Shown: piece after piece, positions 5,314-40,171 of the stretch
Layout: every line of letters starts with the position of its first letter
Numbering within the stretch: position 1 is the first letter of the stretch
Source of the DNA: Adineta vaga
Lineage: Eukaryota; Animalia; Rotifera
DNA length: 64,000 bases
Assembly (NCBI GenBank): GCA_021613535.1
Contig: CP075494.1
Location: 744,001 to 808,000 of the forward strand
Direction: 5' to 3'
Program-made: the position numbers and the translations under genes
Notes under the pieces: model-generated
What the model was told of the DNA's origin: nothing
Database searches by the model: none
What the model saw: the letters and a program-made list of their open reading frames with translations, nothing else

Positions 5314-5385
5314 AATCGGATAGTTTAATTGGTAGAATAGCCGACCGGTTATCGGAAGATATAGGTTCGAGTCCGGCTCTGTTTT
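5314..5385 (+). tRNA. tRNA-like pseudogene or SINE head; anticodon loop degenerate (CCGGTTA, Thr- or Asn-like)
   Basis: A-box TAGTTTAATTGGTAGAAT, anticodon stem CCGA/TCGG, B-box GGTTCGAGTCC, imperfect acceptor stem AATCGGA/TCTGTTT followed by a T-run; T-stem mismatched. Confidence 0.6.
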
Positions 5386-19909: not shown

Positions 19910-20221
19910 TTCAACTTCTAAATTTATAAGTTTATAGTTCGAGTACTCGAGTTTTAAACTATTCAACTTCTAAATTTATAGGTTTATAATTCGAGTACTC
20001 GAGTTTTAAACTATTCAACTTCTAAATTTATAAGTTTATAATTCGAGTACTCGAGTTTTAAACTATTCAACTTCTAAACTTATAAAGTTATAGTTCGAGT
20101 ACTCGAGTTTTAAACTATTCAACTTCTAAATTTATAAGTTTATAGTTCGAGTACTCGAGTTTTAAACTATTCAACTTCTAAACTTATAAGTTTATAATTC
20201 GAGTACTCGAGTTTTAAACTG
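19910..20221 (+). repeat. Left terminal array: 6 x 52 bp
   Basis: Unit TTCAACTTCTAAATTTATAAGTTTATAGTTCGAGTACTCGAGTTTTAAACTA, containing the palindrome TCGAGTACTCGA. Confidence 0.95.
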
Positions 20222-20269
20222 TTCAGCTCGAAAAAAGCTGGCTAGGTGAAACCATGATTGAGCACTTCG

Positions 20270-21030
20270 CTTCTACCCCTGCACACTCACTTGGGCTGTT
20301 CCCTTGCAACACCCACACCCTCACTTTGCTCGTCGCCTCACAGCACTAACTCCCGCAGCCTCACTTTGCTTGTTCCCTTGCAACACCCACCACCGCACCC
20401 ACACTTTGCTCGTCGCCTTACAGCACTTATCCCCGCACCCTCACTTTGCTTGTTCGCGTGCAACACCCACCCCCACACCCTCACTTTGCTCGTCGGGTTA
20501 GAACACCTACCTCCGCACCCACACTTTGCTCGTCGTCTCACAGCACTTACCCCCGCACCCTCACTTTGCTTGTTCGCGTGCAACACCCACCCCCACACCC
20601 TCACTTTGCTCGTCGGGTTACAACACCTACCTCCGCACCCACACTTTGCTCGTCGCCTTACAGCACTTACCCCCGCACCCTCACTTTGCTTGTTCCCGTG
20701 CAACACCCACTCTCACACCCTCACTTTGCTCGTCGGGTTACAACACCCACCTCCGCACCCACACTTTGCTCGTCGCCTCACAGCACTTACCCCCGCACCC
20801 TCACTTTGCTTGTTCCCGTGCAACACCCACTCCCACACCCTCACTTTGCTCGTCGGGTTACAACACCCACCTCCGCACCCACACTTTGCTCGTCGCCTCA
20901 CAGCACTTACCCCCGCACCCTCACTTTGCTTGTTCCCGTGCAACACCCACCCCCACACCCTCACTTTGCTCGTCGGGTTACAACATCCACCCGTGCACCC
21001 ACACTTTGCCCGCCCGCTTACAACTCCCAC
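20270..21030 (+). repeat. C-rich subterminal minisatellite: 40-bp monomers organised as a 120-bp higher-order repeat
   Basis: Cyclic monomers CAACACCCACCCCCACACCCTCACTTTGCTCGTCGGGTTA / CAACACCYACCTCCGCACCCACACTTTGCTCGTCGCCTYA / CAGCACTTACCCCCGCACCCTCACTTTGCTTGTTCSCGTG. Confidence 0.95.
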
Positions 21031-22127
21031 ATCGTTTTGTCGTTGTTGAGTCTTGTGTAGGGTGGTTTCTCTTTTGACTTCCGTGCTCTGTTTTTTTTTA
21101 ACTGGGAGTTTGTGCTAAATGAAGGAGAGATGAGCTGACCGAGCCGTTAGTTCTGGAAAGCCAGATCCGTATCTGTTTGGTTTTCATAAGATGAGTGATA
21201 ACAAGTTATATCTCAGAAGAATAGGAAATTGTGCTGTGTGCTGATACTTGCTATAGTATGTTTCCTGAATAGGGGTTCCGTTGATTTAGCACTTGGATTG
21301 GTTGTTCTCGAATACAGTCTAATGGTTATCTTTGTCGGTTGATTCGTTGGATTAAGAATCGAGAAGAAAAGGAAAGAAAGAAATAGAGGGGATATATGTA
21401 TAGCACGCTGAATCAATAATAGATGAACATAAATAAAATAGAGGGATAGCTGTTGAAACAAGATGTGACACGTGTATAAGTTGTGATGGATAGCGTTAGC
21501 AACGGACGTATAATCAAGTGGTATGAGTTTATAATATAGACTTAAACATTTTGAACGACATTTAACAGTATATGCCCTTGTTTACGATCTGTTGGTAGTA
21601 CTTTCAATTAAAAGAACGTATCTTGATTACGTTACGAATACGACTCTACAAAAATACGAATCCATGTGAATGGAATACAAATGATGAAGTAACTTTTCGC
21701 TATTCTTTGATATGTCGATCTCTTTTATTTATTATTTTGATACTGAATATTCCAGCAAATCGGCAACGAGATTTTGTTATTAGTTTTGGTTTTTGTTGTG
21801 GATAAGAACATCAAAGATTTGTATCATTTTTTTTCATGGATGAAGCCATATGAACAAACATGTCGGCAAGATGTTGTTTATTTGTGTCAGTGGGAAGAAT
21901 GACATATTAAGGCGAAAGCGCATGTATGATGCAACTTTTCATAGTCAATTAAGTGTTATATAATTGCGTTTCACACACCCTCCAGAATATGTGAATAAAT
22001 TAAACTGAATTTTGATTCGTTCTTCTGATGAAAGCTTTTATATAAATAGCTCATTTCGTACAACATTTCTGTATAAAATTCATTTTTTATCCAATTCATT
22101 CGTCCAATTCTTTGCTTATCAGAAATC

Positions 22128-22540
22128 ATGACTTTATTTTCTCACATGTCTTTCATAATTTTGTTCGGTTTCGTCTTAATGACCGATGAATATATGATTG
22201 TATCTCATAATATAACAGGTACCTTGATAAAAATTTTGTTTACGATCTTATTGATTTTTTTTATTTTGAAGCAACATCGTCTTCTGTAATATTTCCAATG
22301 GGACCGAGCACTCGTTCCCAGGGAAAGTTACGGATACGTTATTGGGCTAATCAGACGGCTACGACAACTACCTTAAATTCGAAAACTATTGATGATGCTA
22401 TCGCATTATATTTAAGTAAGAACCAAATGGTGTCTCATGTGGACGACCGCAAATTATATGTTGAAAAAGCTCAGTCTAATACAATTAACATCAATTGGAT
22501 AATGTTTGCCTTATATATGACGTTCGTCCTGTTTTACTAA
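22128..22540 (+). CDS. Small (~119 aa) two-exon secreted or membrane-anchored glycoprotein inside the element
   Basis: Exon 22128-22218 (MTLFSHMSFIILFGFVLM...), GT-AG intron 22219-22271, in-frame join to ORF 22298-22540; sequons NIT and NQT; hydrophobic C-terminus; TATA-like TATATAAA at ~22039. Confidence 0.6.
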
Positions 22541-24827
22541 AAGTAATCTTTCTCCTTTATACTAATGCTGTTGTATATACAAATATTTTTGCACATACAA
22601 GTTTTTGTACACATTAATGTCAGATAAAAAGGTTTTCTTATTCTTAAAATAGCGTAAAATGAAATATCAATTATGCCGGACTATTTGGTTGTATTTCATC
22701 AAAATAAATTTATCAACGTCATAGAGTGTAATCTGTTCATAAATGATATAAAAACATAATCAAACTGTTTAAATATTTTAATTTTGTAGACATAGCGTTA
22801 TCGTGTCATATAGAGAGCAAGATATGGCGTGAATAGATCAAGGAAGCGACTATGTAAACATATGATCATATGATCACTTTCATAAATCAAACAGTTTTTT
22901 TAAAATAAATGAGAAAGATCAAGAAGATATATAGAAACAATTGTCTTCAAATACTCACATATACATTAACAATGGGAAGTTTATCCTTTATCGTGTGTAC
23001 ATTGCATATAAGAAGCGAATTCAATCTAAATTCAATTGAATTATATCGCATAAAAATGAAAAAAAAGAACTAACGTAATAATCTTTGTAATTTATTTTTA
23101 GTCTTTTCTATTATCGTGGAACACGACGATACAGAGAAATAAACTGAGTTTATTTGAATTGTATCTCTTCTAAGAAATAAATTTTACTTTTTTAATCTTA
23201 GGAATATGCGAATATACAGCAACTGATTTGTTTTTATTCATATATTTTTTTTTCGAAAATAATTTTCGATCTTTTTTTATCTCGAGGCATATGGACATTA
23301 AATCATCAGAAAAGTTATTTTTTTCGAAAACAAATATAATTTTTTTCGGACTATTTTCGGTATATATGAATATAGACAGACAATTGTCAAAATTATATTT
23401 GTTCATCTTTTCCTCTTTAATTTTGTATATTTTAACAGCTCTCAAGAGTATGTGTATATATGGATGTACATGTTCCACCTTTTCGTTTTATATATTCTTT
23501 TCCGATGTAAAAAATAATCGGTATAATCCGATTTTAAAGAATTGCTAAATTTCGCCTATTTCAATGAATTAATTTTGATTATCAATCCGATTAAAAATTG
23601 ATTATAATAGTGCTATTTTAATTCATTTTTAATGAAAAAATATTCGAATAGAATTGATCTGTTTCATCTATTTCGTTCACATGGTAAGCCTTTATTCTGT
23701 TATAATCTATTGTTTGCTGCTCATCTATTCTAATCAGTTGCTATCATCAATTCATTTTCACGTATATTACCTGTTAGTCCATTGTAATCAGTTATTATCT
23801 GTTAATATATTTTCATCATACATACCAAAGATATTTGCTTTTCTCAGGATTTGAGCACGAAACCAATAGTTTCACCTGATTATTTAGATTCCTTATATCT
23901 ACTTATCAGTAGACTAAATCTCCACATTAATATAAAAGTTAAAACCTCTGTACATATTTTTTCAAATTTCTCTGGTGCAGTTACATAATTAATCGATTGA
24001 AATCGATTGCAAATGGAATGATTTTAATAGAACTTTTCACTTTAACATATATTTCAATACATTTATTTCAATATTCATTAAAATTAATTAAGAATGGAAT
24101 GATTTTAATCAAAATTATGTGACCAAATTAATTAAAATCAGTTTTTTGAGAGAAAATCGTGCACAAACGATTATGTAAAGAAAAAAAAATCAAATTTTGT
24201 TGTTTTAATCGTCTTTTGTAGATTTCTGTTAGAAGCAGCTGATTTTAATTTAATAATATATAGTGCATTTTTTTACATGGAAGCCCCGCTCGTCTTTATT
24301 TGTTCTTCTATTTCTCTTTCTCTACAATAATCAGCAAAATATGTTTTCGCAGTATCAAGCGCATTTCATGTTTGATTTATATATTTGCATCTATTTTTTT
24401 ATTTTAATGGAAAGCTTTTATTTCTTTTAAATTAATTAAATTGACTCTATATAAGTTTCGACTCATTGATGTAAAGATTAAGATTTTGATAATGCATTGC
24501 TTCTATAATTGATGGAGTTTGTTATGATGTAGTTACGAACACAAAAAGCAATTACAACTTGTATATATATATATATACATAGATGAGAACTTGTGGGATG
24601 AGTGGAAATTGTGATTAGTGCATTTAACAACTATTGACGACGAAAAAAAGAACAAATTATACAAAAAATTCTACGGATTAATGATAAGAAATAAACAAAA
24701 ACAATTATCTACGTATGTACAACAAGAATTAGGCTGCTGTATTATATTGCTATACACATTTAAACGACTAATCGAAAGAAAAAAGGAAAATTTTTGCTTG
24801 CCCATAAATCGAGTTAGTCTATTTTTT

Positions 24828-27146
24828 CTACATATTATCGTTAAATACGCTTTTATCTTCCTCAAAAAAAGATCCTGATGTTTTATCTGACTGATTCATT
24901 GCTGTTATAGCTTCTTTTTGAAAAGAGATATCTGGACGTATAGAGGCGCTTGATTCACGAATAAAATTACTCGGATGAAAGTTATGCGAGGCACTCTGTG
25001 TATAATTCAGTTGATTTCCAACAGCAGGAACATCATACGCTATAATACTAGAGTGCTGATTATGAAATTTTAATTTCATATTCTCATCTCGATGATAATT
25101 AGGTGGTAAAATATAATTAACGCAGCGTGAAGGAATACTCAGTCTTTCAAGAAACGAATTTGATCGATTTCGAGGAATAATAGGTGGTGGTACCTGTCTT
25201 GCAGCATCACCAACATTAGTTTTATACTCAGTTAAAACAGTATTTAACCTAGTGTCTGTGCTAGAAGTTATCGGCTTCGCTGATTTTTCATAGCACCAGA
25301 ATAATTTTAGTAGAGAGCGTTTGAAATAACATTTACAAAACACGTAGATCGTAAAAATCAGTAGAGTGGCAACGGCAAAAATAATCAGAAAAAACGTCAA
25401 CGACCATTTCGATTGAATCACATTCGATACATTTTGTCGAAATTGATTAAATCCATCTTCCCGAAGTCGTTCTTCTATGCCTATTTCTTTCAATAAAGCA
25501 CTTATATTAAGTGAAGGTCTCAAAGTCAAAATATCTGACTGTGCTTCGTTTACTGATTCTCCGAGACGATATGGAGCAATAGATTTTTTCATCGAAAGGA
25601 TGTAAACATTTTCATCTCTACAGACATCTGATCGAAGATCGAATTTGCCGCACGATACGTAGGAGTTACATTTTGTTCTGATAATGCTAACCTTATTAAT
25701 ATTTGTCCAAAGATTTTCTTTCTTATCATTCTTTTCTAAACATTGTAATTTCGAATCAGTCGAAATAGCAAATATATCTGGTGCTAAACGGATACTTTGA
25801 GGCGAAAATAAATCTATTTCATCCTTCGTACATTCTGAAGTATTTGTATTAAATACAATACTTCGAATACAAGGATTCTGAATTTGGCTATATACTGGAG
25901 TAGGAACGGCACAAAACAGAAATTTGGAGCGCTCATCAAACGTGCAACGTCGATGGTCGTGGTTTTCCCATTCCGAAGAATATCCATCCGGACTCAACGT
26001 AAAGTACGTTGGTATGTGAGAGCTTTGTGCCGCTCTCGTCGATGTGATAAAGAAAGGTAGTTTTGTGACTTTATAAAGATCACTCTTTCTCTGCCTGCTA
26101 TTTATTGGACGTCCAAAGATATTTTCGACTCTTAAATGGCCAACAATCTTTGGAATAATTTCGTCAAGATCCACTGTTTGATTTAATTTTTCAAACTTAG
26201 GATCGACACTAACATCAAATTGAAAATCATCTTCAGTCAATTCGTAAGAAATATTCTTCTCATTGACAGAAGTAAATGATAATATTTGATGGACAAGAAG
26301 TTTTGGTATGAAAGCACTTAGAGATGCTCCAAAATCCTCCGGTAAAAGTGTTTTTACAGCTTCATACACGAAATTATATGTAATGGAACGTTGTTCTGCA
26401 GTCAAGAAGTCAAGATTCAATTTATGCTCTTCGATTTTAGTTATTGAATGTACGATTTTATCATAATGATTGCGCATTTCCTGAAGTATCGCATGCTTTG
26501 CGAAAGAGTCGTACTCATTTCGAAAAGCAATTACTTGTCGAATATGCTGATATAGATACTGACGAGTAGCATTTGCGTCATCATAAACATCTTTAAAGGA
26601 TTTTAAAATAGCTAACTGATTATTCTGAAGTGACGCAATAGCGGTATTCATTATCTCGTTCAAGGCAATTTGATGTCCCCGAAAATTCTCTACATCCTCT
26701 AATCTATGCGCTAGTTGTAAGTTACTGGGGCCCAGTAGATCCCCGACAATACGATACAACGTGTAGGCAACTCCACTAACTGCTATTCCTTCTATTACTT
26801 GTCGTTTTGTTCGACTTTTAGCATGGTCTTCCGCGACTTCCTTCAATCGCAGAACATCGCTGTTTTTCAGAAGAAGAGCTCTATATTCTATGCATGTTTC
26901 TAAGGCATAAGCCATTCGAATTGGAAGAACATCGCACAGAAACTGAAAAACAGGTATCTCGGTAATATAATTGATCGAACCATCAATTTGTGAATAACTA
27001 CCTATATACTGCCAAACGGTATTTGTCTCAATATGATGTACTAAAGTATTGTTTTTTACATTATCTAAGAATGCACTCTGAGCATTTACAACAGCAAATA
27101 TGCCAAAAAAGCTTAATGTGACGACGTAAAGCCCTTTAATAGGCAT
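24828..27146 (-). CDS. Class-I viral fusion (env/F-like) glycoprotein, 772 aa, intronless
   Basis: Signal peptide, furin site RTKR followed by a hydrophobic fusion peptide (QVIEGIAVSGVAYTLYRIVGDLLG), heptad region, Cys-rich ectodomain, TM helix WSLTFFLIIFAVATLLIFTIYVF, juxtamembrane Cys, long tail. Confidence 0.85.
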   Translation of the reverse strand: MPIKGLYVVTLSFFGIFAVVNAQSAFLDNVKNNTLVHHIETNTVWQYIGSYSQIDGSINYITEIPVFQFLCDVLPIRMAYALETCIEYRALLLKNSDVLRLKEVAEDHAKSRTKRQVIEGIAVSGVAYTLYRIVGDLLGPSNLQLAHRLEDVENFRGHQIALNEIMNTAIASLQNNQLAILKSFKDVYDDANATRQYLYQHIRQVIAFRNEYDSFAKHAILQEMRNHYDKIVHSITKIEEHKLNLDFLTAEQRSITYNFVYEAVKTLLPEDFGASLSAFIPKLLVHQILSFTSVNEKNISYELTEDDFQFDVSVDPKFEKLNQTVDLDEIIPKIVGHLRVENIFGRPINSRQRKSDLYKVTKLPFFITSTRAAQSSHIPTYFTLSPDGYSSEWENHDHRRCTFDERSKFLFCAVPTPVYSQIQNPCIRSIVFNTNTSECTKDEIDLFSPQSIRLAPDIFAISTDSKLQCLEKNDKKENLWTNINKVSIIRTKCNSYVSCGKFDLRSDVCRDENVYILSMKKSIAPYRLGESVNEAQSDILTLRPSLNISALLKEIGIEERLREDGFNQFRQNVSNVIQSKWSLTFFLIIFAVATLLIFTIYVFCKCYFKRSLLKLFWCYEKSAKPITSSTDTRLNTVLTEYKTNVGDAARQVPPPIIPRNRSNSFLERLSIPSRCVNYILPPNYHRDENMKLKFHNQHSSIIAYDVPAVGNQLNYTQSASHNFHPSNFIRESSASIRPDISFQKEAITAMNQSDKTSGSFFEEDKSVFNDNM

Positions 27147-28360
27147 GTTCGTTCAATTTCTGATCTGAACAGATCTAACAAGAAGCTATGGACAAGCAAA
27201 TATAGAATGAAGTACAAGGATCAAAAGAATAGGATAGAAAATCAAGTAGGAATACGAAAAATAAAGAGTATTTCTGTAATTATTTTGTGAAGAAGCAAAG
27301 ACAGTATATGAGAAAAATTGTAAAATATATCAGACTTTTGTTGAACTTGAAAAATTAGCCGTTTTTGGAATGATTCAAATATGTGAGTGTCCGTAAAAAT
27401 GTAAGGATGCGACCACACGATAGACGATTAAATAATATTGAATAAAGCAGATAGCTGTTATGGCGTGAAGTTTACACTATATGCGAGAGAAAATAGTCCG
27501 AAAAGAAATATAAAGGAGAGAAAAGATAAAAAATGTCTCCCTTTCATATTCGCGGCAGCGTAACATCATGCATCAGTGAAGCATGACAATCTGTCATATA
27601 TTTATTAGATAAAAGTGGAGATGAATTGTATTAGATGAAAAGCTGATTATGAACGATCGATTATTATCTTGTTTTTATAGTAAAGGTATTAAGCAGTGGG
27701 ATATTGACAAACACTTCTGTATGTATCTGAGAAATTGGTTTAAAAGGATATAACGCTTATATTTTTCAAAGTGTGAAGAGATATTTATCAAGAATAAATC
27801 ATTGTCACGTTTTCAATCTTGTTGTTTCAACTTGGGCGACTAAACTATTTCATTAACATGAATAATTTTAAGATACCAGTATCAAACCATAACCAATTAT
27901 TTCAGGTGCATTGAATGGTAATAATCCAAATAATCCAGTATCTTTCCTTATCCTTATAAAAATTCTCGGATTTCACGAACATATTTCAGTATCATATAGA
28001 TTCTTCTTGATTTAATTATTGTTCGTTTAAACTCGTTCTTTTATGTTTGTCAATACTGTACATTTTGATTTTTTATATATTTAATTATTAACTTAGTACT
28101 GTTACGCTGTTGATTGACTATTACATAAACAATTAGAAAAAATATTAACAAAATAAGTATATATTTTTCGCAGAAAAATGTATTCAATTATATTTTTCAA
28201 ATTTATTTCAGTTATATTAACAAAAGCTTATTGATACAGTGAGAAGAAAAGTATGTGATACAGAAAAAACATGTATATATTTACTTCTAATAGAGATAAA
28301 GTTTATGTATATAGTAGTAGCAGTACTCAATTCGTTTGGATACAAAAGGCATATCACAAC

Positions 28361-29170
28361 TTATTGTCTCTCCAAAAATTGGCGAACACACTGTTCTATT
28401 ATACGTGATCCCTCGTAAGTTGGATGTAAATTATCATCGCTTATATGATATCGAGTGAGACGTGGATCGATAGTCTGAAAATTTAATCTATGCGACAGCT
28501 CTAATAGCATTATGTTACATTTATCAATCTCCTGTAGAACTCTAACTCCACTAGACAAATAACGCGTACCTTTTATACGCCATTGCAAGAGCTGCCATGC
28601 TAGCTGCAGCCCCGGATATAGAAGACGAATGGCTTCAACAGTTTCTCTTATGCGATGGACAGTTTCTTCTGCGCACATCACATGAAGATCATTCGTTCCT
28701 AAAATAAGTATAATTCGACTTGCTCCACGCATCATTTCCTGACCTTCAATACTTCTCAACCAAGTGAGCATCTTAAAGCAATTACAACCACTCTCATAGG
28801 TAAGCTTTACTAAATCTTTTGTCGTTTGCAAGTTGTACTCAATCAAACGACTAGCTATAGATGAACCAGCTACTACAGTTATTGGTTTGTAAATTTGATG
28901 AAATATGTTTTCATATTTCCATGGAAAACAGTTCTGACTGGGAAAACTTGGATAAGTAAATTGTTCACACAATAATTTTTTGTTATATTTTTGTCGCCAA
29001 CGTTGTTGTTGTCGCCGTTTGTTCTTGGGTTTTTGCGATTTCTTTTGATGGTTTTTAGACATGACTTTATTGCATGTAATTGATTTAGAAGTTGATACAG
29101 GCTTCATTGTATATTGAGAAATTTGATTTGTAAATTGATTATTTATCAATGTGTTATATTGCAAATTCAA
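28361..29170 (-). CDS. SGNH/GDSL-type hydrolase with a basic N-terminal extension
   Basis: Block I 'VAGSSIA', block III 'ILILGTNDL', block V 'DDNLHP'; K/R/Q-rich N-terminus; likely ATG start at ~29107. Confidence 0.85.
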   Translation of the reverse strand: MNLQYNTLINNQFTNQISQYTMKPVSTSKSITCNKVMSKNHQKKSQKPKNKRRQQQRWRQKYNKKLLCEQFTYPSFPSQNCFPWKYENIFHQIYKPITVVAGSSIASRLIEYNLQTTKDLVKLTYESGCNCFKMLTWLRSIEGQEMMRGASRIILILGTNDLHVMCAEETVHRIRETVEAIRLLYPGLQLAWQLLQWRIKGTRYLSSGVRVLQEIDKCNIMLLELSHRLNFQTIDPRLTRYHISDDNLHPTYEGSRIIEQCVRQFLERQ

Positions 29171-31505
29171 ATATTGATATGATATTTTGGGTAAAAAAAC
29201 CTTTTGAGTTATTTGTAATAATGTATTTGAAGAAAATAATCTACTATAATGTGTAATTTTCTTATATGTTTTTCAATGCCGATATGTCGTTAATTCTCTC
29301 CTTTTCTCTCTCTTTCTCTCCCCCCTCTTTGTTAACTTCATGTGAAAAATATCTTCCTTATGTTGCATGATGTGATTGGTTAATTGACTGAAGTGAATAG
29401 AGAAATCAATTTCAACTGAACACTTGGCGTGAAAAATATACATATAGCAATAATGAATGTTCATATAATGTACGATCTTCCGATTTATTTGATAAAGACG
29501 AACATACCCTTTTAGTTTTCAAACAGAAGTGGGTAAAATATCGAGCGAAAAATGAAATAATTTACGTGCATTTCGTCAATCTTTGACATTTAGTTTTCAT
29601 CAAATCAAAAAAATTATCTTAAAAGTATTATTTATTGAAAATATAACAAGATATTGGTCCATATTTATAAAAAAACAGCAGAATTTTTTTTTGGAGAGAA
29701 TGAGAAGTTTTTTGTTGATCACACTCGAGTATATCAATCCGGTTGATGATTACGATACGCTTTAATTGAAAAATACTTGTTTTCCTTGATTTGTTTTTAC
29801 ATACGCTAGTCAAATTTAATGAACGGGAGTATCCAATCAAGATACTCCAATGCTTTCTGAATAATCATATTGAATCGAATTAGTTGTCAAAATTTCATTG
29901 TGAACAATGATTAAAACAATATCACTCGTTGTGGACTAATTTCAGTATTAAGAATATGACGATTGATATTTCGATAAATAATATTATAAATCGATCGTAG
30001 TACACAGATTTGTAAACTAACCAGCCACTAAGATGATGATCATCGTTATCCTTTATAACATACCTTCTAAGCTATTTATATTTGTTATTCATATATTATA
30101 AAAATTTATTCACTTCAAAACGATCGATCATCGATGATCAGATATAAATATATACTAGAGCAAGACAGCTCAACTCAAAAGGGTATCCAAGTTGTCGATT
30201 CAATTCATTGGAAAAAATGCATTACGATGCAATTTATTTCAACTCAAAAAATGAATTAAATTGAATCTAGTTGATTTTCTCAGCTCTGATATAAACATGT
30301 GATTTTTCAGTGAAATGAAAACTATTTTTCTTAAGTTTAATTGTGTTTACAATAACGATTCTATATAGGAGAATGATACTGAACAACCTGAAAACTTAAT
30401 AACATATTTTTGATGGATCATGAAACATATCATTGGTATTTGGTATAATACACTGGAAAGAAACTGGAAATTTGTTCACATTCGATATGAAGAGGACTAA
30501 ACTGTTTTATTCATCAACATCGAATTCTCATAAGCTTTCTAAATTTCAAAAATTGAAGATAAAACGTGAAAAGGACCGTTTGCATTACAATATATTTTTA
30601 TGATTAAATGGTAGTTTTGTTGTCTCATTTATCTATTATTTGTCAATTGTGTGCCGCTTTCGGCGAAAACATCATTATAAATTGCAATAGTTAAAAGAAA
30701 GTTATATTATTTTCATACATTACACATCATGTATAAAAGAAAAAAGAGTTTTGCAATTTCTTATTGTTGAACATATTCCTCTTAAGAATTCATACAATAA
30801 TACTATTTCAACTAATATTGTAATTAGAATTGAATATAACATCTTCTGCTCTACTCTCATATACGTATAGTATACTCATTCTAATTTTATCTGAGAAAAT
30901 TTATTGAGAATTACTTTGAGCATATGATTTATCATATTCTATTTATTTGTCTCTTGCAAATGCTATGGAGGATAGAGATGTGAAAGAAAAAAGTTATTGA
31001 CATCTATATTGATTTAATTTTATACATGTATTTTATTGATAATATTTTCATGTCTATATAGGCTGTTTACAAATGAGTGACAATATACGGAATGCGTATG
31101 TTGTTCGTATTTCAGGACAATATTGTTGATTAATGAATTATGCGAACCGATGATAAAATATGCAGTTGGTTGAAATTATCATAATCATTGTTAATAGGTA
31201 AAGATATATACAAATAATAATGCCTAGAATGAGAGAAAAAGAGGCAGCAACAACTAGATACAACAAAAATTCTATGGAAGATCTATAACTACACTAACTA
31301 CAGAAAATGACAGCAGATGTAGGAATGATACTTGAATTTTAACACTAAACTTATTAAAGTTAGTTAAATTCAATAGAAAAAAATCATCAAAATCAGCGCG
31401 GAATCATTTGTCATTTTTACACTACTTTTATTAAAGTTAAAATGCTACCCTTAAATTGAAGTCTATAAACGTTTTTTGAATATTTGTTTGTTAACTAAAT
31501 GATTT

Positions 31506-33269
31506 CTAATCTAGTGCCATAGAGAGCATTCTTTTTTCATATTTTTTTCGGATATTTGTCAACTTATTTGTATTGTATAAATCACATATTAAACAAATGT
31601 AAGTCAAGAATGTGGATTCATCGAAACCACGGACAATATTTTTATATTGTGCTAACCAACTGAAAATCTGTTCGCAAACTTCTGTGTTCGTTGAGTTAGC
31701 TATAGGATGTTTACGAGGATTTGTGTGTTTTCGACACCACGGATCTGTATGATTACGATAATGAAGTTTGTCGCAAAAAATTTCTAATCGAGATATTCTC
31801 TGATTAGCTGGAGTTTCTTCACTAAAATTATTTTTATTTTGAACGAAGCGTTTCAAATGACATGCATCATCATAGATTAAGACATCAGGAATATGTTCGC
31901 AATTTTTCATCATATAAACAAGAAAATTATATACTTGTTTAATGGATTCACTTCCGAAAAGTTCGGAAACACTGCAAATAAAGCCACAATTATAGACAGC
32001 AGCTATAATTCCTGATGTTCTATGAAGAATTTTTTTATATTGAAGTGATTTAAGGGTTTTACAACGTAGCGCGAACACTACTGGTCGACAATTTTTATTG
32101 TTTCTTAAGTTGTGCTGCTTTCGTTTGCAGTCTTTATGACTAACGGGATGTACGTCATCGTTATCGTTTCCAGTTTTGTGTGCTTCACACGTTTTACTCT
32201 TAAAAGCAGGTGTAGCTGAGCAGCCAACTTTTACGAATGGAAGAGAATCATCTTCGCATGGTATAGTCAAACTCTTAACTCTACAGACACGACGTGTTGC
32301 TTTTTGATGTCCATCTAGGACTACAGTGGCACAACAATTAGATCCGCAATATGCCTCATGAGTTTTACGTGCCCACTTTTGAGCAAACATTTTTTTCACA
32401 TCCGGTTGAATCTGCAATAGCAGAGATTGAAAATCTGTGCCCGTCGGTACTTGTATATAAATATTAACTTCACGGAAAAAGTGACCTAAACTCCAGATAA
32501 ACCATGTCTTTTCTATATGAAATCTATCCATAAGTCGAGTGTCGCTAGAACCACTTTTTTGACACATAAAATTATATGCATTTACAAAGTTTGAGAATCC
32601 ACAATGCTTGAACAAAATATCAGCATCAAGTTGATGGAGTATATTTTTTTCGTAACCAATATTGGAAAAGAGGACAACGACTTCTGCTTTCTCTTCTATG
32701 TGTAGAAATTTTGTTCCGTTTTGCTGAACGATGTAGTTATAGTGATATTTAGCCTTACACGAAGGGCACAATTTATAGAATAAAGTACCTTTCTCAGATT
32801 CTTTACCCCAACGAAAAATACTGACATCTTGATAAGGGCATGGAGAATTTAGTGCTGTTCTGTTACATGCTGTGTTAACACAGTTTGTAATTGTCGGAAT
32901 ATAACTATGTAACAACGAGACAACATGATTTTGCTTATTTTGTTTGCAATAATTTTTTATCGCATTATCAATTTCATGGTCTAGTTTTCCAGCAATTTCA
33001 TCCTTTATCATAGGTAAAATGATGTTCCAATTAGCAAGGCGCACATCAATTTGAGTTGCAGTATATGCAGACTGATACAAACTATTCAAAATTGCAGTAA
33101 TGTGCTGAACACGATTTGGAACATTTTTATCTATACGAACATCTAATCGACGCAATGTGGTTGCTATTTCAATATTCGGTAATGGTTGGAATAGCTCGAA
33201 TGGATTACGAAGTGCAAAAGTCATTCTTTTTCTTTTTATTGCTTCTTGTGTACGATTACTATTCTTCAA
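31506..33269 (-). CDS. KDZ-superfamily (Kyakuja-Dileera-Zisupton) transposase with CxC5/CxC6-like Cys clusters
   Basis: 'CPSCKAKYHYNY', 'VVLDGHQK..RRVC', 'YNCG....ELFGSES..QV', 'YDDACHL', 'DKLHYRNH....C', 'NTEVCEQIFSWL'; uninterrupted ORF; first ATG at 33224. Confidence 0.85.
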   Translation of the reverse strand: MKNSNRTQEAIKRKRMTFALRNPFELFQPLPNIEIATTLRRLDVRIDKNVPNRVQHITAILNSLYQSAYTATQIDVRLANWNIILPMIKDEIAGKLDHEIDNAIKNYCKQNKQNHVVSLLHSYIPTITNCVNTACNRTALNSPCPYQDVSIFRWGKESEKGTLFYKLCPSCKAKYHYNYIVQQNGTKFLHIEEKAEVVVLFSNIGYEKNILHQLDADILFKHCGFSNFVNAYNFMCQKSGSSDTRLMDRFHIEKTWFIWSLGHFFREVNIYIQVPTGTDFQSLLLQIQPDVKKMFAQKWARKTHEAYCGSNCCATVVLDGHQKATRRVCRVKSLTIPCEDDSLPFVKVGCSATPAFKSKTCEAHKTGNDNDDVHPVSHKDCKRKQHNLRNNKNCRPVVFALRCKTLKSLQYKKILHRTSGIIAAVYNCGFICSVSELFGSESIKQVYNFLVYMMKNCEHIPDVLIYDDACHLKRFVQNKNNFSEETPANQRISRLEIFCDKLHYRNHTDPWCRKHTNPRKHPIANSTNTEVCEQIFSWLAQYKNIVRGFDESTFLTYICLICDLYNTNKLTNIRKKYEKRMLSMALD

Positions 33270-33869
33270 ATAGATAACACTTAAACTACAATATAAATTC
33301 TTATGATGCAGATCTGTTTCACGATATCTATTAAAATGAAATAACTTGCCTAGGTACAGATCAATGAATTAATAACGAACACAAACTGAGCCGACGACGA
33401 ACGAATAACCAAGTGATATGATAATGAACGATGATAAACGATAAAGTAAAGTACATTATACTTTTTTTCTTTTTGCTAGCGGGTACAAGTGTCAATAGCA
33501 ATCATTCTAAGCTTTTTTGATGAGCTATCTGATCATTCAACCGTTGTTTCACATCATATGTATAGAGAAAACATAATGGTCAGTGAAACTCAATCAAACA
33601 CTTACATATAATAATACCCTGTCATCTTGCTTTTATGAGACTTGCTTAAGGCTATTACACGATGAATATTTTATAAAATCATAGGATAAAAAGTCAATAT
33701 CTCTTAATCATTCATCCGTATAATAAGAAAAGAGAAAAGAACGAAATGTTGAAAAGAAAGAAAGACAATAGACATGTTTCATTTATATTTCACTTTCTCT
33801 AAAGTTATCATATCAATCATTTCAAACCGTATACTTATCTTCAACTTTCGCACTTTTTTTTTCAAACTA

Positions 33870-34130
33870 TTCATTGCTCTTCAATTTATAATTCATTTTT
33901 TCAATTTATTATTCGTTCTTCAATTTATAAATCATTTTTTCAATTTATTAGTTGTTATTCGATTAGTTACTCGTTTTTTTTTTCGATTTATCATTCGTTC
34001 TTCGATTTATAATTCATTTTTTCAATTTATTATTCGTTCTTCAATTTATAAATCAATTTTTCCAATCTATTAGTGGTTATTCGATTACTTACTCGTTTTT
34101 TTCAATTTATCATTCGTTCTTCGATTGATT
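33870..34130 (+). repeat. AT-rich degenerate direct repeats between the divergent transposase and helicase genes
   Basis: ~20-bp subunits (TTCAATTTATTATTCGTTC / TTCAATTTATAATTCATTTT) forming an approximately 125-bp duplication. Confidence 0.75.
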
Positions 34131-34385
34131 ACTTACTTTTTAATTCATAATCCATTTTTCTATCGCGAACTCAATCAATTCTTTTATCAATCTTATTCTT
34201 CATTATAAATATCCAAACCGTATTGAAAAATTTTCTGATCACAAAATTTCGCTCGTACTTGTGATATCGTACTGACACTTACGTTAATTAGCATCTGATA
34301 TCGTTTCAAGCAATATCATTCATCTCGTCAGTCTGCATTTTACGCTGGTTTAAATATATAAATTCTTAACATAAAATTTCCAATT

Positions 34386-37075
34386 ATGTCTTCAAAAGGT
34401 TTCACTACATATCAACTTCGTACCATCATGCGTAAGGCAGGAAATGAAGAAATGAACGTTGATGAAATTCTAGATGAATCAATTGCATCTGTCATAAAAA
34501 ATATCAGCAATTCTTCTCAACTACCTGTTGAATACTTACTTACCTTGCTGCTTCCTGCAGTTAGTCACCACATGAACGGATCGCAAGTTATTAGTAATAC
34601 CGGTCAAACGACCAACGTCGCATTTTATACTATCATAATTGGATATCCCGGCGCTAACAAGTCATCGGGAATAGAAAAAATAAAAGAAGCTTGTCTTATT
34701 ATTGAGCAATTTGAGGGTATTGATGACGATCACTCGAGAATAAATAATAGTGCTACTGTAGAATCGCTCTTGTCAGAACTAAAGAATACTCATTCACGAC
34801 TATTTCAGTTATGGGACGAAGCATTAACTCTGTTACAGTCGTTCGGTATGTATAAGAGTGGAGGAGCAGCATATGACAGATCGATTATGTGCTCCTTATA
34901 TAATACATCATCAACCGTTCGCCGACAGACAAAAGGTACAAGCATGACTATTCAGAGTCCTGTACTTAATATCACAGCAGCAGCCCATCCTGTTGACATT
35001 TTTGATTCAATGAGAGTCGATGGTGAAGCTGATGGTCTTCTTCTGTCTCGTTTTTTTCGCTGCACCGACGCCAAAAATTCTTCACTCTTTTGAGATTGAT
35101 CAACCTGATCCTGATCAGCCGAGTATATTGCATACTCTTTTCATAATCCATTGTTTTAACAGTGAGGAAGTAGGAAACGATGACGACTCGAAAGTGATGT
35201 ATTCTTTTTCACCAGAAGCTTTGAAAGTCTTGAATACAGCTTGGAATTCATATACTGACATTATCAAAGTTTCTTATGAGTTTGATAGTTTTATTGCTTC
35301 TATCTATTCGAAAGCTCGCGTTCAAATAATTCGGATAGCTGGAGCTCTACACGCTATGTCACTAGCAGCAGCCGTTTTCGATTGTTTAACATCAATAAAC
35401 AAAGTGCCTAATTACTTCGATAAATCAAAACAAACATTGAGTTTACTACGAGACGCAGTTGCTGAATTTAAAAAAAGATATAAGTGGCAAATAATATCTG
35501 AAAAGACTACTCTGGGATCTGTTTCGATGATGAACTATTATCTAAAACAGAAGAAAATATATGCAAATCGTAAGTACTTTTATCTTACAAAATCGTTTTT
35601 CATACTTGCATGATAGATTGTTTTTTTAACAAAACGTAGGAAAAAATAATAACATAGATTGTAGAACTAACCACATAAAAGTAACGTCGTGGAATGTTGT
35701 TGACGCTTAAGTCTAATATATGAACAGTTCAGCTCGTTGATGTTATCTTCAGACGAAACAACAAATAGATGATAATATAACACGTTTGAGAAGAGAACGA
35801 TCATATATTTAAAAAAAGCACAAATTTATAATGCTGCCGTACATATAAGAAAAGAAAAATGATATGTTTTCCAACAGTTACTAACCAGTAGCTCGAAGTA
35901 TTAAAAAACAGGAAAAGCAGTTTCATCACTTTTCTTTCTCTTTCTCTCATTACACTTGAGATATTTAAAATCTGTTAGGACGTTCCTTCACATAATATAA
36001 AACATGTGACTTATATTATTAACCTGTTTATTATAATACAATATTTCTTTAGGTAAAATCAACGAAACGGCGGAAGAGATGCTGGAACGATTTCAGAAAG
36101 AAGAAAAAATTGAAGCAGGTCTTCAATTTGAAAAGGAAGAAAAATTAGAAGCACGAAAAAGTAATCGTGAAAATAAACTTATGGAAACGACGACAGCTCG
36201 ATGTGCTGAACGATTAGTGCTTCTGACACCGGGTATTAAGGTACCATGGGCCGTGATTAGTCGTAATCATGGAGGATTCAAAATCAATGAACTTCATGAT
36301 GCTGCCAGAAAATTAGACAATGAAAAAATAGGTAAGTTGCTTTTCTTCCCTTCTCACATGCACTTTCAATTATTGTTTCGCAGGTAAACTCGTCAAAGAA
36401 AAGAAGCCGAATGCAAAAAGAGCAACCACTTATTTCATCAAGACGGTCATTGACGAAAATTGGGATATTGATACGTTAACTACGTTCACCAACAAACTAT
36501 CTCAATATTCTGTAAAACTAAAAGAATATGTTGACTCGTGCGTTCATCGAGATTTTCAAGACTTTCTCGAAGATCCAGAGGATAAAACTGATAAAGTGCG
36601 TAGAGCCAGTGATGTTGCTCCGCTTAGAGATAGTTCGCAAACAAACGATATATCGACCAATGTTACTTCTAAGGAAGGCATACCGATGTCATTTCGTAAC
36701 GTAGATTTTCAAATCGCAGGTGGTGGTTTTCTACTACAAAAACCATCAAATCCTAAATCTGCCGTTCAAACAACCACAACAACGGACAAACAGCACACAG
36801 TAGTTGATTGTAATCCTTCTATTCTAGCTGAGGAGTCACCACCGTTTTCTCAACAATCCCTACTCCAGGAAGAAAAAAATAATGACGAACATAATCAGCA
36901 ACAACCCTTATCGACTACCTTTTCATCTCCTTCACCTGCCTCTCCAGCTATTACAGACTTAAGACAATCCACACCAACTGAACGCACACCAAAACGAATT
37001 CGATTCGACTTAAATAATGACGACTCGAACCTAAACAAGTCACCTGCACCCATTTTCTCAACATTATTTTCTTAA
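34386..37075 (+). CDS. DUF3987/YfjI-like AAA+ helicase-type ATPase, spliced, with one frameshift in a T-run at ~35051
   Basis: Walker A 'IIGYPGANKS', Walker B 'QLWDE', sensor 'LNITAAAHP', Arg-finger-like 'DGLLLSRF'; introns ~35571-36052 and ~36332-36383; S/T/Q-rich tail with NLS-like PKRIR. Confidence 0.75.
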
Positions 37076-37511
37076 AGAAATGTTGCAATATCTGCTTATT
37101 TCATCAATAACCACTTCCTCATAATTTAACAAACACAACTCATATAGACAAAACATACTTCGCACACGATCATTCTATAATTATCTAATATTCGTCGTGT
37201 TCGCTTATTCATCTCATGCAACCGTCATAGTCGCTTCTTCTTCTCGTCCATCCGTCAGGTTCGCTCATTCATTACCTGTATCCGCCATGTTTACTTTTCA
37301 CCACTTCTCTATTTCTTCTTCATCATTTCTGTATTTCTTCTAAATAAATTGTTTACTAATCTAATACTATTCATAGTAATTGATGTGATACTTCAAATTT
37401 ATAATCTAAAGTTGAAATGTTAAATTTCATACTTGACAGTTCAAATCTGAAAGTGTAAAAGTTGTTAACCTTTATATTCGGAATCTCAGTTTTCAAAGTT
37501 CAAAAGTTCAG

Positions 37512-37965
37512 TAGTTTAAAACTCGAGTACTCGAATTATAAACTTATAAATTTAGAAGTTGAATAGTTTAAAACTCGAGTACTCGAACTATAAACTTATA
37601 AATTTAGAAGTTGAATAGTTTAAAACTCGAGTACTCGAACTATAAACTTATAAATTTAGAAGTTGAATAGTTTAAAACTCGAGTACTCGAATTATAAACT
37701 TATAAATTTAGAAGTTGAATAGTTTAAAACTCGAGTACTCGAATTATAAACTTATAAATTTAGAAGTTGAATAGTTTAAAACTCGAGTACTCGAATTATA
37801 AACTTATAAATTTAGAAGTTGAATAGTTTAAAACTCGAGTACTCGAACTATAAACTTATAAATTTAGAAGTTGAATAGTTTACAACTCGAGTACTCGAAT
37901 TATAAACTTATAAATTTAGAAGTTGAATAGTTTACAACTCGAATTAAAAGTTGAATAGTTGAAAC
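37512..37965 (-). repeat. Right terminal array: 8 x 52 bp plus a partial terminal unit, inverted relative to the left array
   Basis: Unit TAGTTTAAAACTCGAGTACTCGAAYTATAAACTTATAAATTTAGAAGTTGAA is the reverse complement of the left unit; ends ...AGTTGAATAGTTGAAAC. Confidence 0.95.
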
Positions 37966-38943: not shown

Positions 38944-40171
38944 TCAATTTACTGTTATTTTACGCAAACGAATTGGTTGAGTTCGAGTTCCTTCAGCGCC
39001 TCTGAATTGTGTCACAACACTAACACGATGATTTCGAAAAATATTTATTACATTGAAAAATTCTTGACGAAATAATCGACTTGATAAACAATAAATATAA
39101 AAAGAAGCCTAAAAAAAAGAAAGATTTTTCAAGAAAAAGAAATCTTATCTTTTATTATATTAAACTTACTGCATAATTGATTGAAGCAATTAAAAGTGCA
39201 AAATTATTGAATTGAAATACTTGATCTAATGTAAGTACTAATTGTAAAGCATAGGTTATTAGAATATAGAAGAGACCTAATGGAACTTGTGTCATAAAAA
39301 AGAGAAATATACTTGATATCATTATTAATAAGATTTGTCGATCAAGAAAAACGCGATGTCCACGTTTTATTTCTTTATTTCGTTGTTGTTGACGACGAAG
39401 TTTAATAAAGATATGTATAGTAAATCCAAGAAGAAGTATTGTTGGGAAAATTATTTGAAGAATTATTATTAAAATTGGCCAAATCTTTGAAAAAAAAAGA
39501 TTGAAAAATATTTTCGAAATAAATATGAAAAAATTTACGGTGAAATAAAAATATTGATATGTTGGATTTGCTATTGGACTAAGAAAACATACAATTGCAC
39601 CATCAACAGCCTCTATCCATGGTAATGCTAAGTGAAAATTTAGTAAAACAGAAATAATAATAATAATACATGTACCAATAGAAACTCTTTTTCTTGTACA
39701 AAGTTGTTTAACTCGAAATGGAAACTGAATACGAATCCATCGATCAATTGTTATTGTTAAAAGAAGCCAAGATGAACAACACATACAATAATACTGAATA
39801 AATGAATAAGTGCGACATAATTGATTCATTAAATCTTTATTCGCTGTTGAAATATTAAAACCAAGAAAGATAAAAGTATAAAAACATGATAATAAATAAA
39901 TTCCATTAGATATTGTCATATAAATAAATAAAGTACTTGTTGAAACTTTACGAAGACTTTGACGATTAAAGATTATGATACTCATTAAATGACCAAAATA
40001 ACCAAAAAGAAAAATAATTATATAACCATAAAGATTAATATTTCTTTGTAGAGGTGTTACAACAGGTGGACCAAAATTTGGTGTAAGATCCATTCCACCA
40101 TCAGGAGGAAAAGGAATCATTGGGTCGCCACTAATCAGAAAAACAGTGTTGATGTTGTTATTATCATTCAT
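38944..40171 (-). CDS. Orphan rhodopsin-like (peptide-receptor-type) GPCR, 3 exons
   Basis: 'FGYFGH', 'LRKVST', 'SSWLLLTITIDRW', 'FFMTQVP', 'INYA'; last exon 'ASFYIYCLSSRLFRQEF' ending at TGA 38944. Confidence 0.9.

What the first reader, a model, noticed from the sequence alone, without database searches (positions are those of the whole stretch)
19910..37965. Candidate new virus-like DNA transposon: KDZ transposase, AAA+ helicase, envelope fusion protein and SGNH esterase between inverted 52-bp arrays
Seen: two inverted arrays of the same 52-bp unit lie 18 kb apart. They enclose a CxC5/CxC6 KDZ transposase, a divergently transcribed DUF3987-like helicase, an intact 772-aa class-I fusion glycoprotein, an SGNH hydrolase and a small glycoprotein. 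No RT, LTR, gag or PolB is visible inside. Known: KDZ elements are cargo-carrying DNA transposons; env genes normally travel with LTR elements or DNA viruses; GDSL/SGNH ORFs are recurrent cargo of bdelloid retroelements. Inference: this is one mobile unit with integration, replication and membrane-entry modules, either an enveloped or vesicle-borne DNA transposon or a reduced endogenous DNA virus. I do not know of this gene set being described, but cannot search.
Basis: partly seen in the sequence, partly recalled or inferred. Interest (0 to 1): 0.95.

Follow-up and report, generated by a model that had tools for sequence, protein, structure and literature searches.

The report
Rotifer KDZ transposon carrying envelope-like gene
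An 18-kb cut-and-paste DNA transposon of the rotifer Adineta vaga carries, besides its transposase and a helicase-like gene, a conserved envelope-like membrane glycoprotein and an esterase, a gene set that I found described nowhere and that could explain how DNA transposons spread between asexual animals.

Summary
Inverted arrays of one 52-bp unit (6 and 8 copies) bound about 18 kb. Inside lie an uninterrupted KDZ/CxC5 transposase gene, a divergent multi-exon DUF3987 helicase-like gene (one frameshift in this copy), a 772-codon type-I membrane glycoprotein ORF and an SGNH esterase ORF. There is no RT, LTR, gag, capsid or polymerase between the arrays.

The host is Adineta vaga. Env, esterase and transposase relatives share one A. 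ricciae contig in the same order. All four genes share one further 43.8-kb contig, at 56-90% protein identity, and the three single-ORF genes are full length there. A second, near-identical copy appears to sit on another A. vaga chromosome.

KDZ and DUF3987 relatives occur across rotifers. Env and esterase were found only in the Adineta-type lineage, which suggests a later capture.

The "class-I fusion protein" label rests on architecture only: sequence, profile and structure tests failed or found nothing. Ends and target-site duplication are unresolved. The "small glycoprotein" is unverified.

Best reading: a KDZ transposon family that captured and keeps an entry-like module. This is a new variant of a known kind.

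The parts
19910..37965 (.). Whole candidate element as bounded by the outer edges of the inverted arrays. True termini are not fixed.
19910..20225 (+). Left array: 6.1 copies of the 52-bp unit, each with the 12-bp palindrome TCGAGTACTCGA. A degenerate partial unit extends outward to about 19881.
20312..21030 (.). GC-rich 40/120-bp minisatellite just inside the left array. It has no counterpart at the right end and its role is unknown.
24828..27146 (-). Envelope-like type-I membrane glycoprotein, 772 codons, uninterrupted and intron-less. Features: signal peptide, single conserved RxKR site at residues 112-115, 10 conserved ectodomain cysteines, TM at 579-608, variable 160-residue tail.
28361..29107 (-). 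SGNH/GDSL esterase, 248 codons, with a basic N-terminal region. Block I Ser and block III Asn are invariant in the 6 sequences aligned (window plus 5 relatives); the block V His is kept in 5 of 6.
31506..33224 (-). KDZ transposase with CxC5 zinc cluster, 572 codons from the first ATG, uninterrupted. Candidate catalytic D319, D467/D468 and E533 are invariant in 8 relatives.
33854..34160 (.). 39/121-bp tandem repeats in the intergenic region between the divergent KDZ and DUF3987 genes
34386..37075 (+). DUF3987 helicase-like P-loop ATPase gene, multi-exon (at least 3 exons). It is broken in this copy by one frameshift and is given as one part.
37504..37942 (-). Right array: 8.4 copies of the same 52-bp unit, inverted. 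Degenerate units extend inward to about 37392 and outward to about 37965.

Best explanation
This is one copy of a family of large (about 18 kb) KDZ-superfamily cut-and-paste DNA transposons of Adineta rotifers.

Shown:
- The element is bounded by inverted arrays of a 52-bp unit, a foldback-like end structure.
- It encodes an uninterrupted KDZ/CxC5 transposase and, divergently, a DUF3987 ATPase. A modelled relative of that ATPase has the fold of phage primase-helicase modules.
- It also encodes an envelope-like type-I glycoprotein and an SGNH esterase.
- The same genes stay linked, and the three single-ORF genes stay full length, in at least two other bdelloid lineages.

Inferred:
- The transposase binds the phased 12-bp palindromes in the arrays, which act as subterminal binding sites, and then excises and reinserts the whole unit.
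- The ATPase helps either DNA unwinding or replication of the excised element, or target choice, as AAA+ partners of DDE transposases do in bacteria.
- KDZ plus DUF3987 is the old core. The env and esterase pair was captured later in the Adineta-type lineage, probably from the pool of env and GDSL ORFs that rotifer retroelements share.
- The pair is kept by selection because it helps the element reach new cells, the germ line or new animals.

This particular copy has one frameshift in the ATPase gene and may depend on another copy.
For: - Arrays and palindromes.
- KDZ and CxC5 are above Pfam cut-offs. The candidate acidic residues are invariant in 8 relatives down to 51% identity.
- DUF3987 is above cut-off. 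The model of the natural relative P0039 has pLDDT 84 and pTM 0.88. It matches phage primase-helicase/DUF3987 proteins at E 5e-14, TM 0.6-0.67 and MCM helicases at E 5e-5. PHROG 'DNA helicase' scores 3e-14. The Walker-A Lys and Walker-B Asp-Glu are invariant.
- Linkage in A. ricciae: env (86%), SGNH (78%) and KDZ (90%) relatives share a 44,541-bp contig, with accession order env-SGNH-KDZ in two records.
- Linkage on the ENA contig: env (63%), SGNH (56%), KDZ (73%) and DUF3987 (87%) relatives share a 43,819-bp contig.
- A more distant KDZ (55%) shares a 15,844-bp contig with a DUF3987 gene.
- Selection on env: the RxKR site and 10 ectodomain cysteines are conserved. Invariant columns make up 64-75% of the ectodomain against 22% of the tail.
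- Two A. vaga copies: the window's exact env protein is on two contigs (18.1 and 16.9 Mb), and the esterases differ by 1 of 248 residues. Homoeologous chromosomes differ by about 13% in DNA (PMC8494291).
- No retroelement parts lie inside the arrays.
- Known KDZ elements are large, carry extra genes, and have TIRs and 8-bp TSDs (PMC11343200; PMC12730594).
Against: - Termini and target-site duplication are not defined. The flanks outside the arrays share no inverted sequence, and the one 8-bp direct repeat near both edges is within chance.
Linkage therefore rests on shared contig lengths and accession order.
- More than half of the 18 kb has no recognisable gene.
- The env protein matches no Pfam fusion-protein family and no solved structure. 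Its model failed at pLDDT 32, and heptad-repeat evidence is marginal.
- The ATPase gene is broken in this copy.
- The two 'copies' in A. vaga are inferred from cluster tables, not seen.
Confidence: 0.65

Rival explanations
1. Composite locus. A KDZ+DUF3987 transposon sits next to, or has swallowed, remains of a retroelement (TelKA- or Vesta-like) that supplied env and the GDSL esterase. On this reading the two genes are passengers without a role for the DNA element.
For: - A. vaga LTR elements carry paramyxovirus-F-like env (TelKA) and GDSL ORF3 (Vesta) (PMC5408684).
- The neighbourhood is full of TE debris: a Penelope-like RT, an rve integrase and Harbinger pieces.
- Env and esterase relatives were found only in the Adineta-type lineage, while KDZ and DUF3987 relatives are widespread.
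- Long non-coding spacers surround env and esterase.
Against: - No LTR, gag, RT or IN lies between the arrays. The rve ORF lies outside them and in the wrong order.
- Env and esterase remain full-length and linked to KDZ at 56-86% identity in two other lineages, with cysteines, cleavage site and catalytic residues kept. Dead passengers would not show this.
Confidence: 0.15
2. Domesticated, no longer mobile gene cluster. The transposase, ATPase, glycoprotein and esterase are host genes inherited vertically at one locus in Adineta. The arrays are relics.
For: - Identities between A. vaga and A. ricciae (78-90%) are compatible with vertical descent.
- Linkage in other species was inferred without seeing flanks.
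- The DUF3987 gene has spliceosomal introns.
Against: - The arrays are 96-98% alike.
- A near-identical second copy is inferred on another chromosome.
- One gene is broken in this copy.
- The element interrupts a row of GPCR genes together with other TEs.
- Many KDZ and DUF3987 paralogues exist per rotifer genome.
Confidence: 0.1
3. Reduced endogenous DNA virus: a viral genome that lost capsid and polymerase genes and now relies on a captured transposase.
For: - The gene set includes an envelope-like glycoprotein plus a helicase of a family otherwise typical of phage replication proteins.
- A precedent exists in Teratorn, a herpesvirus fused to piggyBac (PMC6431247).
Against: - There is no capsid, polymerase, primase or packaging gene, nor any further conserved ORF.
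- The helicase family is linked to KDZ in lineages where no env was detected.
- GC content equals that of the host flanks.
- A survey of A. vaga found no definite endogenous viruses (PMC8494291).
Confidence: 0.05

Closest known systems
KDZ (Kyakuja-Dileera-Zisupton) DNA transposons, e.g. the 11-kb KDZ1-3 of Cryptococcus and TET/JBP-carrying Dileera/Kyakuja of fungi
   Same: KDZ transposase with an N-terminal CxC zinc cluster, large size, extra genes carried inside, and inverted ends.
   Different: The cargo here is an envelope-like glycoprotein, an esterase and a DUF3987 ATPase. The ends are arrays of a 52-bp unit rather than a plain TIR. The host is an animal. The 7-8-bp target duplication is not shown.
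Env-carrying LTR retrotransposons of rotifers and other animals (TelKA; errantiviruses with F-type or gB-type ENV) and GDSL-ORF3 Vesta elements
   Same: A mobile element keeps a captured membrane glycoprotein with signal peptide, RxxR cleavage site, cysteine set and TM anchor. GDSL esterase is a recurrent accessory ORF in the same host.
   Different: There is no gag, pol or LTR. The carrier is a DNA transposon. No sequence match to Pfam fusion-glycoprotein families was found.
Virus-transposon hybrids: Teratorn (piggyBac plus alloherpesvirus). From my own knowledge, also Maverick/Polinton elements with captured fusogens in nematodes.
   Same: A DDE-type integrase or transposase is combined with an envelope-type glycoprotein in a DNA element.
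   Different: Those elements keep capsid, polymerase and packaging genes. This one has none.
Foldback-type transposon ends and subterminal repeat arrays of CACTA/En-Spm elements (from my own knowledge)
   Same: Inverted ends built of tandem short units that hold a repeated protein-binding-like motif.
   Different: The link to a KDZ transposase is not known to me. Binding was not tested.

Membership tests
KDZ DNA transposons | KDZ transposase domain (PF18758) above the curated cut-off | tested here: met
   39.0 bits against a cut-off of 26.6. Relatives score the same way.
KDZ DNA transposons | N-terminal CxC zinc-chelating cluster | tested here: met
   CxC5 scores 38.7 bits against 26.9. C130, C135, C168, C171 and H222 are invariant in 8 relatives. 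CxC6 was not seen.
KDZ DNA transposons | Conserved acidic catalytic residues | tested here: met
   D319, D467/D468 and E533 are invariant in 8 relatives. Their catalytic role is inferred.
KDZ DNA transposons | Terminal inverted repeats | tested here: inconclusive
   Inverted arrays are present, but the exact termini are unknown.
KDZ DNA transposons | 7- or 8-bp target-site duplication | tested here: inconclusive
   Only a chance-level 8-mer is shared by the flanks. A Penelope-like element abuts the left end.
KDZ DNA transposons | Several copies at different sites | tested here: inconclusive
   A second near-identical copy on an 18.1-Mb contig is inferred from cluster tables. Its DNA was not seen.
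F-type class-I fusion glycoproteins (paramyxovirus F, baculovirus F, errantivirus ENV) | Type-I topology: signal peptide, large ectodomain, one C-terminal TM | tested here: met
   Hydrophobic segments lie at 1-27 and 579-608 only.
F-type class-I fusion glycoproteins (paramyxovirus F, baculovirus F, errantivirus ENV) | Internal furin-type site giving a small N-terminal and a large C-terminal piece, followed by a fusion peptide | tested here: inconclusive
   A single RxKR at 112-115 is conserved in all relatives that cover it. The following segment is only mildly hydrophobic.
F-type class-I fusion glycoproteins (paramyxovirus F, baculovirus F, errantivirus ENV) | Two heptad-repeat regions | tested here: inconclusive
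   A crude heptad score reaches the 99th percentile of shuffles only at 164-200 and 563-603. The latter overlaps the TM.
F-type class-I fusion glycoproteins (paramyxovirus F, baculovirus F, errantivirus ENV) | Sequence or profile match to a fusion-glycoprotein family or solved structure | tested here: not met
   No Pfam fusion family matches at E<=10 in any of 6 members. No PDB match by sequence or profile. One source (UniRef) names the A. ricciae relative 'Envelope protein'.
F-type class-I fusion glycoproteins (paramyxovirus F, baculovirus F, errantivirus ENV) | Fold | tested here: inconclusive
   The model from 6 sequences has pLDDT 31.9. No fold search was run on it.
SGNH/GDSL hydrolases | Family profile match | tested here: inconclusive
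   Lipase_GDSL_2 scores 23.2 bits against a cut-off of 32.9 and 26.4 bits for P0030. PF13472 is on record for three relatives.
SGNH/GDSL hydrolases | Catalytic Ser (block I), Asn (block III), Asp-x-x-His (block V) | tested here: met
   GSS and GTND are invariant in the 6 sequences aligned (window plus 5 relatives). DNLH is present in 5 of 6.
DUF3987 helicase modules of phage and plasmid primase-helicases | Family profile match | tested here: met
   49.3 bits against a cut-off of 27 for the first piece. P0039 scores 86.8 bits. PHROG 2373 'DNA helicase' scores 3e-14.
DUF3987 helicase modules of phage and plasmid primase-helicases | P-loop ATPase fold and Walker motifs | tested here: met
   Phage primase-helicases match at E 5e-14, TM 0.6-0.67 and MCM at E 5e-5. 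K92, D144 and E145 are invariant. In the closest rotifer relatives that I read (P0039, P0041, P0047), as in the window's copy, the glycine before the Walker-A lysine is replaced.
DUF3987 helicase modules of phage and plasmid primase-helicases | Uninterrupted reading frame in this copy | tested here: not met
   There is one frameshift relative to the uninterrupted relative P0039.
Virus-like DNA elements (Maverick/Polinton, Teratorn) | Capsid, DNA polymerase and packaging ATPase genes | tested here: not met
   No such domains and no further long ORFs lie between the arrays.
LTR retrotransposons with env | LTRs, gag, RT/IN in the same unit | tested here: not met
   No long direct repeats and no RT/IN ORFs inside. 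The rve ORF at 14650-15540 is outside the arrays.

The most novel reading that the evidence does not exclude
A capsid-less DNA transposon that travels between cells or animals. After excision by the KDZ transposase, the element (or cell material holding it) leaves in membrane carrying its own envelope-like glycoprotein, with the esterase helping at the membrane. This would give a class II transposon its own route of horizontal transfer in asexual bdelloid rotifers.
Probability: 0.2. Interest if true: 0.95.

Novelty: new variant of a known kind. Interest (0 to 1): 0.78.

Why it matters
Bdelloid rotifers have been asexual for a very long time, and theory says transposons should then die out or overrun the host. 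One proposed answer is that class II elements persist by horizontal transfer (PMC7943196), but no DNA transposon with its own means of travel is known in them.

A KDZ transposon family that has kept an envelope-like glycoprotein and an esterase under selection in several lineages would make that idea testable with sequence and expression data. It would also add a third route of env capture, by a cut-and-paste DNA transposon, to those known for LTR retroelements and Maverick- or Teratorn-type elements. And it would give KDZ elements, so far studied mainly in fungi and fish, a well-defined animal family with a conserved helicase-like partner gene.

Tried and rejected
- AlphaFold of the env from 6 sequences: pLDDT 32, unusable. 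No fold search was run on it.
- Env against PDB by sequence and by profile, and all six env relatives against Pfam at E<=10: nothing meaningful.
- DUF3987 profile against PDB sequences: nothing. Fold search then worked.
- Search for a TSD or TIR outside the arrays: only chance-level k-mers.
- Search for LTR- or TIR-like repeats around env and esterase: only short AT-rich chance matches. One 50-nt pair at 72% identity brackets the two genes and is judged to be chance.
- Rfam and tRNA scans: nothing in the element.
- Further DUF3987 relatives checked for contig lengths shared with KDZ contigs: no new pairs.
- Literature: no paper was found that links KDZ or Zisupton with an envelope gene or with rotifers.
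- One call failed on a too-short search term and was corrected.
- Rejected idea: that the rve integrase at 14650-15540 belongs with env. It is outside the arrays and in the wrong order for gag-pol-env.

Full report
**1. The observation**

Tandem Repeats Finder reports a 52-bp unit in 6.1 copies at 19910-20225 and 8.4 copies at 37504-37942. The two arrays are in inverted orientation, with arms up to 319 nt long and 96-98% complementary. One natural copy of the unit (window 20014-20065) matches 13 times within 3 mismatches, all inside the two arrays. None of 100 shuffles gave a match.

Each unit holds a perfect 12-bp palindrome, TCGAGTACTCGA. It occurs 6+8 times, spaced exactly 52 bp, and nowhere else in the window. 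Degenerate units extend the right array inward to about 37392 and outward to about 37965. A partial unit lies just left of 19910.

A GC-rich 40/120-bp minisatellite (20312-21030) lies just inside the left array only. A 39/121-bp repeat (33854-34160) lies between the two divergent genes.

**2. The genes**

- **Transposase.** The ORF at 31506-33269(-), 572 codons from its first ATG at 33224, matches KDZ (39 bits) and CxC5 (38.7 bits), both above Pfam cut-offs. Candidate catalytic residues D319, D467/D468 and E533 and the zinc-cluster cysteines are invariant in eight relatives down to 51% identity.
- **DUF3987 gene.** It starts at 34386(+), divergent from the transposase gene, and matches DUF3987 at 49 bits.
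  - In this copy it carries one frameshift. A natural relative, P0039 (87% identical), reads straight through. I searched the pieces apart and joined nothing.
  - Downstream exons are shown by tblastn of natural relatives and by open frames up to the stop at 37075. The gene therefore has at least three exons.
  - An AlphaFold model of P0039 with 12 aligned relatives is confident (pLDDT 84, pTM 0.88). It matches phage primase-helicase/DUF3987 proteins (E 5e-14, TM 0.6-0.67) and MCM helicases (E 5e-5). PHROG 2373 'DNA helicase' scores 3e-14.
  - The Walker-A lysine and Walker-B Asp-Glu are invariant. In the window's copy and in the closest rotifer relatives that I read (P0039, P0041, P0047), the glycine before that lysine is replaced.
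- **Envelope-like glycoprotein.** The 772-codon ORF at 24828-27146(-) is uninterrupted.
  - It has an N-terminal hydrophobic signal and one RxKR site at residues 112-115.
  - Ten ectodomain cysteines are conserved in four full-length relatives.
  - There is one TM at 579-608 and a variable tail.
- **Esterase.** The ORF at 28361-29107(-), 248 codons, has a basic N-terminal region. In the 6 sequences aligned (window plus 5 relatives), the SGNH block I Ser and block III Asn are invariant and the block V His is kept in 5 of 6. Its Pfam score is below the cut-off.
- **What is absent.** Between the arrays there is no LTR-like direct repeat and no RT, integrase, gag, capsid or polymerase ORF.
- **'Small glycoprotein'.** The only candidate is an unsupported 80-codon ORF (22298-22540).

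**3. Host and surroundings**

A protein one residue different from the window's esterase is annotated in Adineta vaga (UJR18691.1) on an 18,146,847-bp contig. The window's own esterase is on a 16,930,519-bp contig, and the window's exact env protein is on two contigs.

The published A. vaga assembly is haploid with six chromosomes, and its homoeologues differ by about 13% in DNA (PMC8494291). Two copies with identical env and 247/248 identical esterase therefore point to a recent duplication onto another chromosome. This is an inference from cluster tables. I could not read the second locus.

Left of the element lie these features:
- a Penelope-like RT ORF (17177-18856) with a GIY-YIG-like tail;
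- an rve integrase fragment (14650-15540, minus strand);
- Harbinger-type pieces (11862-12843).

Two 7tm_1 GPCR ORFs (8199-9230 and 39155-40171) bracket the whole transposon patch. GC content of the element equals that of the flanks, apart from the minisatellite.

**4. Linkage elsewhere**

Identity of each gene's relative to the window's protein, on the two other contigs:

| Gene | A. ricciae, 44,541-bp contig | ENA, 43,819-bp contig |
|---|---|---|
| KDZ | P0007, 90% | P0008, 73% |
| env | P0002, 86% | P0004, 63% |
| SGNH | P0030, 78% | P0033, 56% |
| DUF3987 | not recovered | P0039, 87% |

- In A. ricciae the accession numbers run in the order env, SGNH, KDZ in one record and in the reverse order in a second record.
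- The rank KDZ > env > SGNH is the same in both comparisons, as expected if the genes diverged together.
- A more distant KDZ (P0011, 55%) shares a 15,844-bp contig with a DUF3987 gene.
- KDZ relatives occur in Rotaria and Didymodactylos. DUF3987 relatives also occur in Brachionus and a mussel.
- Env and esterase relatives were found only at 56% identity or more, i.e. in the Adineta-type lineage. The search tool needs shared 5-residue words, so more distant env genes may have been missed.

**5. What the glycoprotein is**

Its layout matches F-type envelope proteins: signal, short N-terminal piece with two cysteines, basic cleavage site, helix-prone region without proline or glycine, cysteine-rich middle, membrane-proximal segment, TM and tail. 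The TelKA elements of A. vaga carry such proteins, described as acquired from paramyxoviruses (PMC5408684), and F-type ENV is widespread in animal retroelements (PMC13524379).

Membership is not shown:
- No Pfam fusion family matches any of six relatives at E<=10.
- No solved structure matches by sequence or profile.
- The structure model failed at pLDDT 31.9.
- A crude heptad score is only marginal.

UniRef names the A. ricciae relative 'Envelope protein', on grounds that I could not check. The proteins I had in mind as comparators are paramyxovirus F, baculovirus F and the TelKA env. I fetched none of them.

**6. Mechanism**

Shown: the anatomy, the family memberships of three genes, and the conserved linkage.

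Inferred:
- Cut-and-paste transposition by the KDZ enzyme, acting on arrays whose phased palindromes look like subterminal binding sites.
- The ATPase as a DNA-unwinding or replication helper or, alternatively, as a target-selecting partner like the AAA+ partners of bacterial DDE transposases.
- Env and esterase as a later-captured module kept by selection, for entry into new cells, the germ line or new hosts.

Rivals:
- A composite of a KDZ element and retroelement remains (0.15).
- A domesticated immobile cluster (0.10).
- A reduced endogenous DNA virus (0.05).

The virus reading is weakest. No structural or polymerase gene is present, and the helicase family is tied to KDZ genes, not to viruses, in rotifers.

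**7. Novelty**

Six literature searches found no paper linking KDZ/Zisupton elements with envelope genes or describing them in rotifers.

Known neighbours are:
- cargo-carrying KDZ elements of fungi;
- env-carrying retroelements;
- Teratorn.

I rate the element a new variant of a known kind.

**8. Limits and declarations**

Synteny therefore rests on shared contig lengths and accession order.
- I left out any scan of the viral-contig collection with the element's proteins or repeat, and any fetch of named animal-virus fusion proteins, because that could fetch a virus of animals. This is listed under referred steps.
- No contig looked human.
- Breaks counted in this copy: one frameshift in the DUF3987 gene, and none seen in the env, esterase or KDZ ORFs.
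- Two short metagenome env fragments (P0005, P0006) depart from the family at their C-terminal ends. This may reflect contig ends or decayed copies.
I wrote it before I knew that a frameshift separates them. I have deleted nothing and do not repeat those bounds here.

Noticed in passing
window 17177-19127: Penelope-like element: a 559-codon RT ORF with readable RT motifs but no Pfam hit at E<=1, followed by a GIY-YIG-like ORF. It ends within 800 bp of the left array and may mask the true left terminus.
   Followed up: partly
window 11862-15540: A patch of transposon debris: Harbinger-type HTH_Tnp_4/DDE_Tnp_4 pieces (11862-12843), a SWIM-like ORF (13328-13666) and an rve integrase fragment with H2C2 zinc domain (14650-15540, minus strand).
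   Followed up: partly
window 8199-9230 and 39155-40171: Two rhodopsin-type GPCR ORFs on the minus strand bracket the whole transposon patch. This suggests insertions into a tandem GPCR gene row, and the pair is useful as an anchor for finding an empty site.
   Followed up: no
window 20312-21030: A GC-rich (43%) 40/120-bp minisatellite, stop-free in several frames on both strands, present only inside the left end. Its function is unknown.
   Followed up: no
window 33854-34160: 39/121-bp tandem repeats in the 1.1-kb region between the divergent transposase and ATPase genes. This may be a shared regulatory region.
   Followed up: no
window 34386-37075 and relatives P0039, P0041, P0047: In the window's copy and these rotifer DUF3987 proteins, the glycine just before the Walker-A lysine is replaced by asparagine, while a more distant relative (P0054) keeps the usual glycine. 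This is a conserved deviation of unknown meaning.
   Followed up: no
window 24429-24478 and 30249-30298: A 50-nt direct repeat pair at 72% identity brackets the env and esterase genes. I judged it to be chance in AT-rich DNA, but it is worth a look when other copies are available.
   Followed up: no
window 5314-5385: An Rfam tRNA match just above the gathering score (30.8 bits) that ARAGORN does not call.
   Followed up: no
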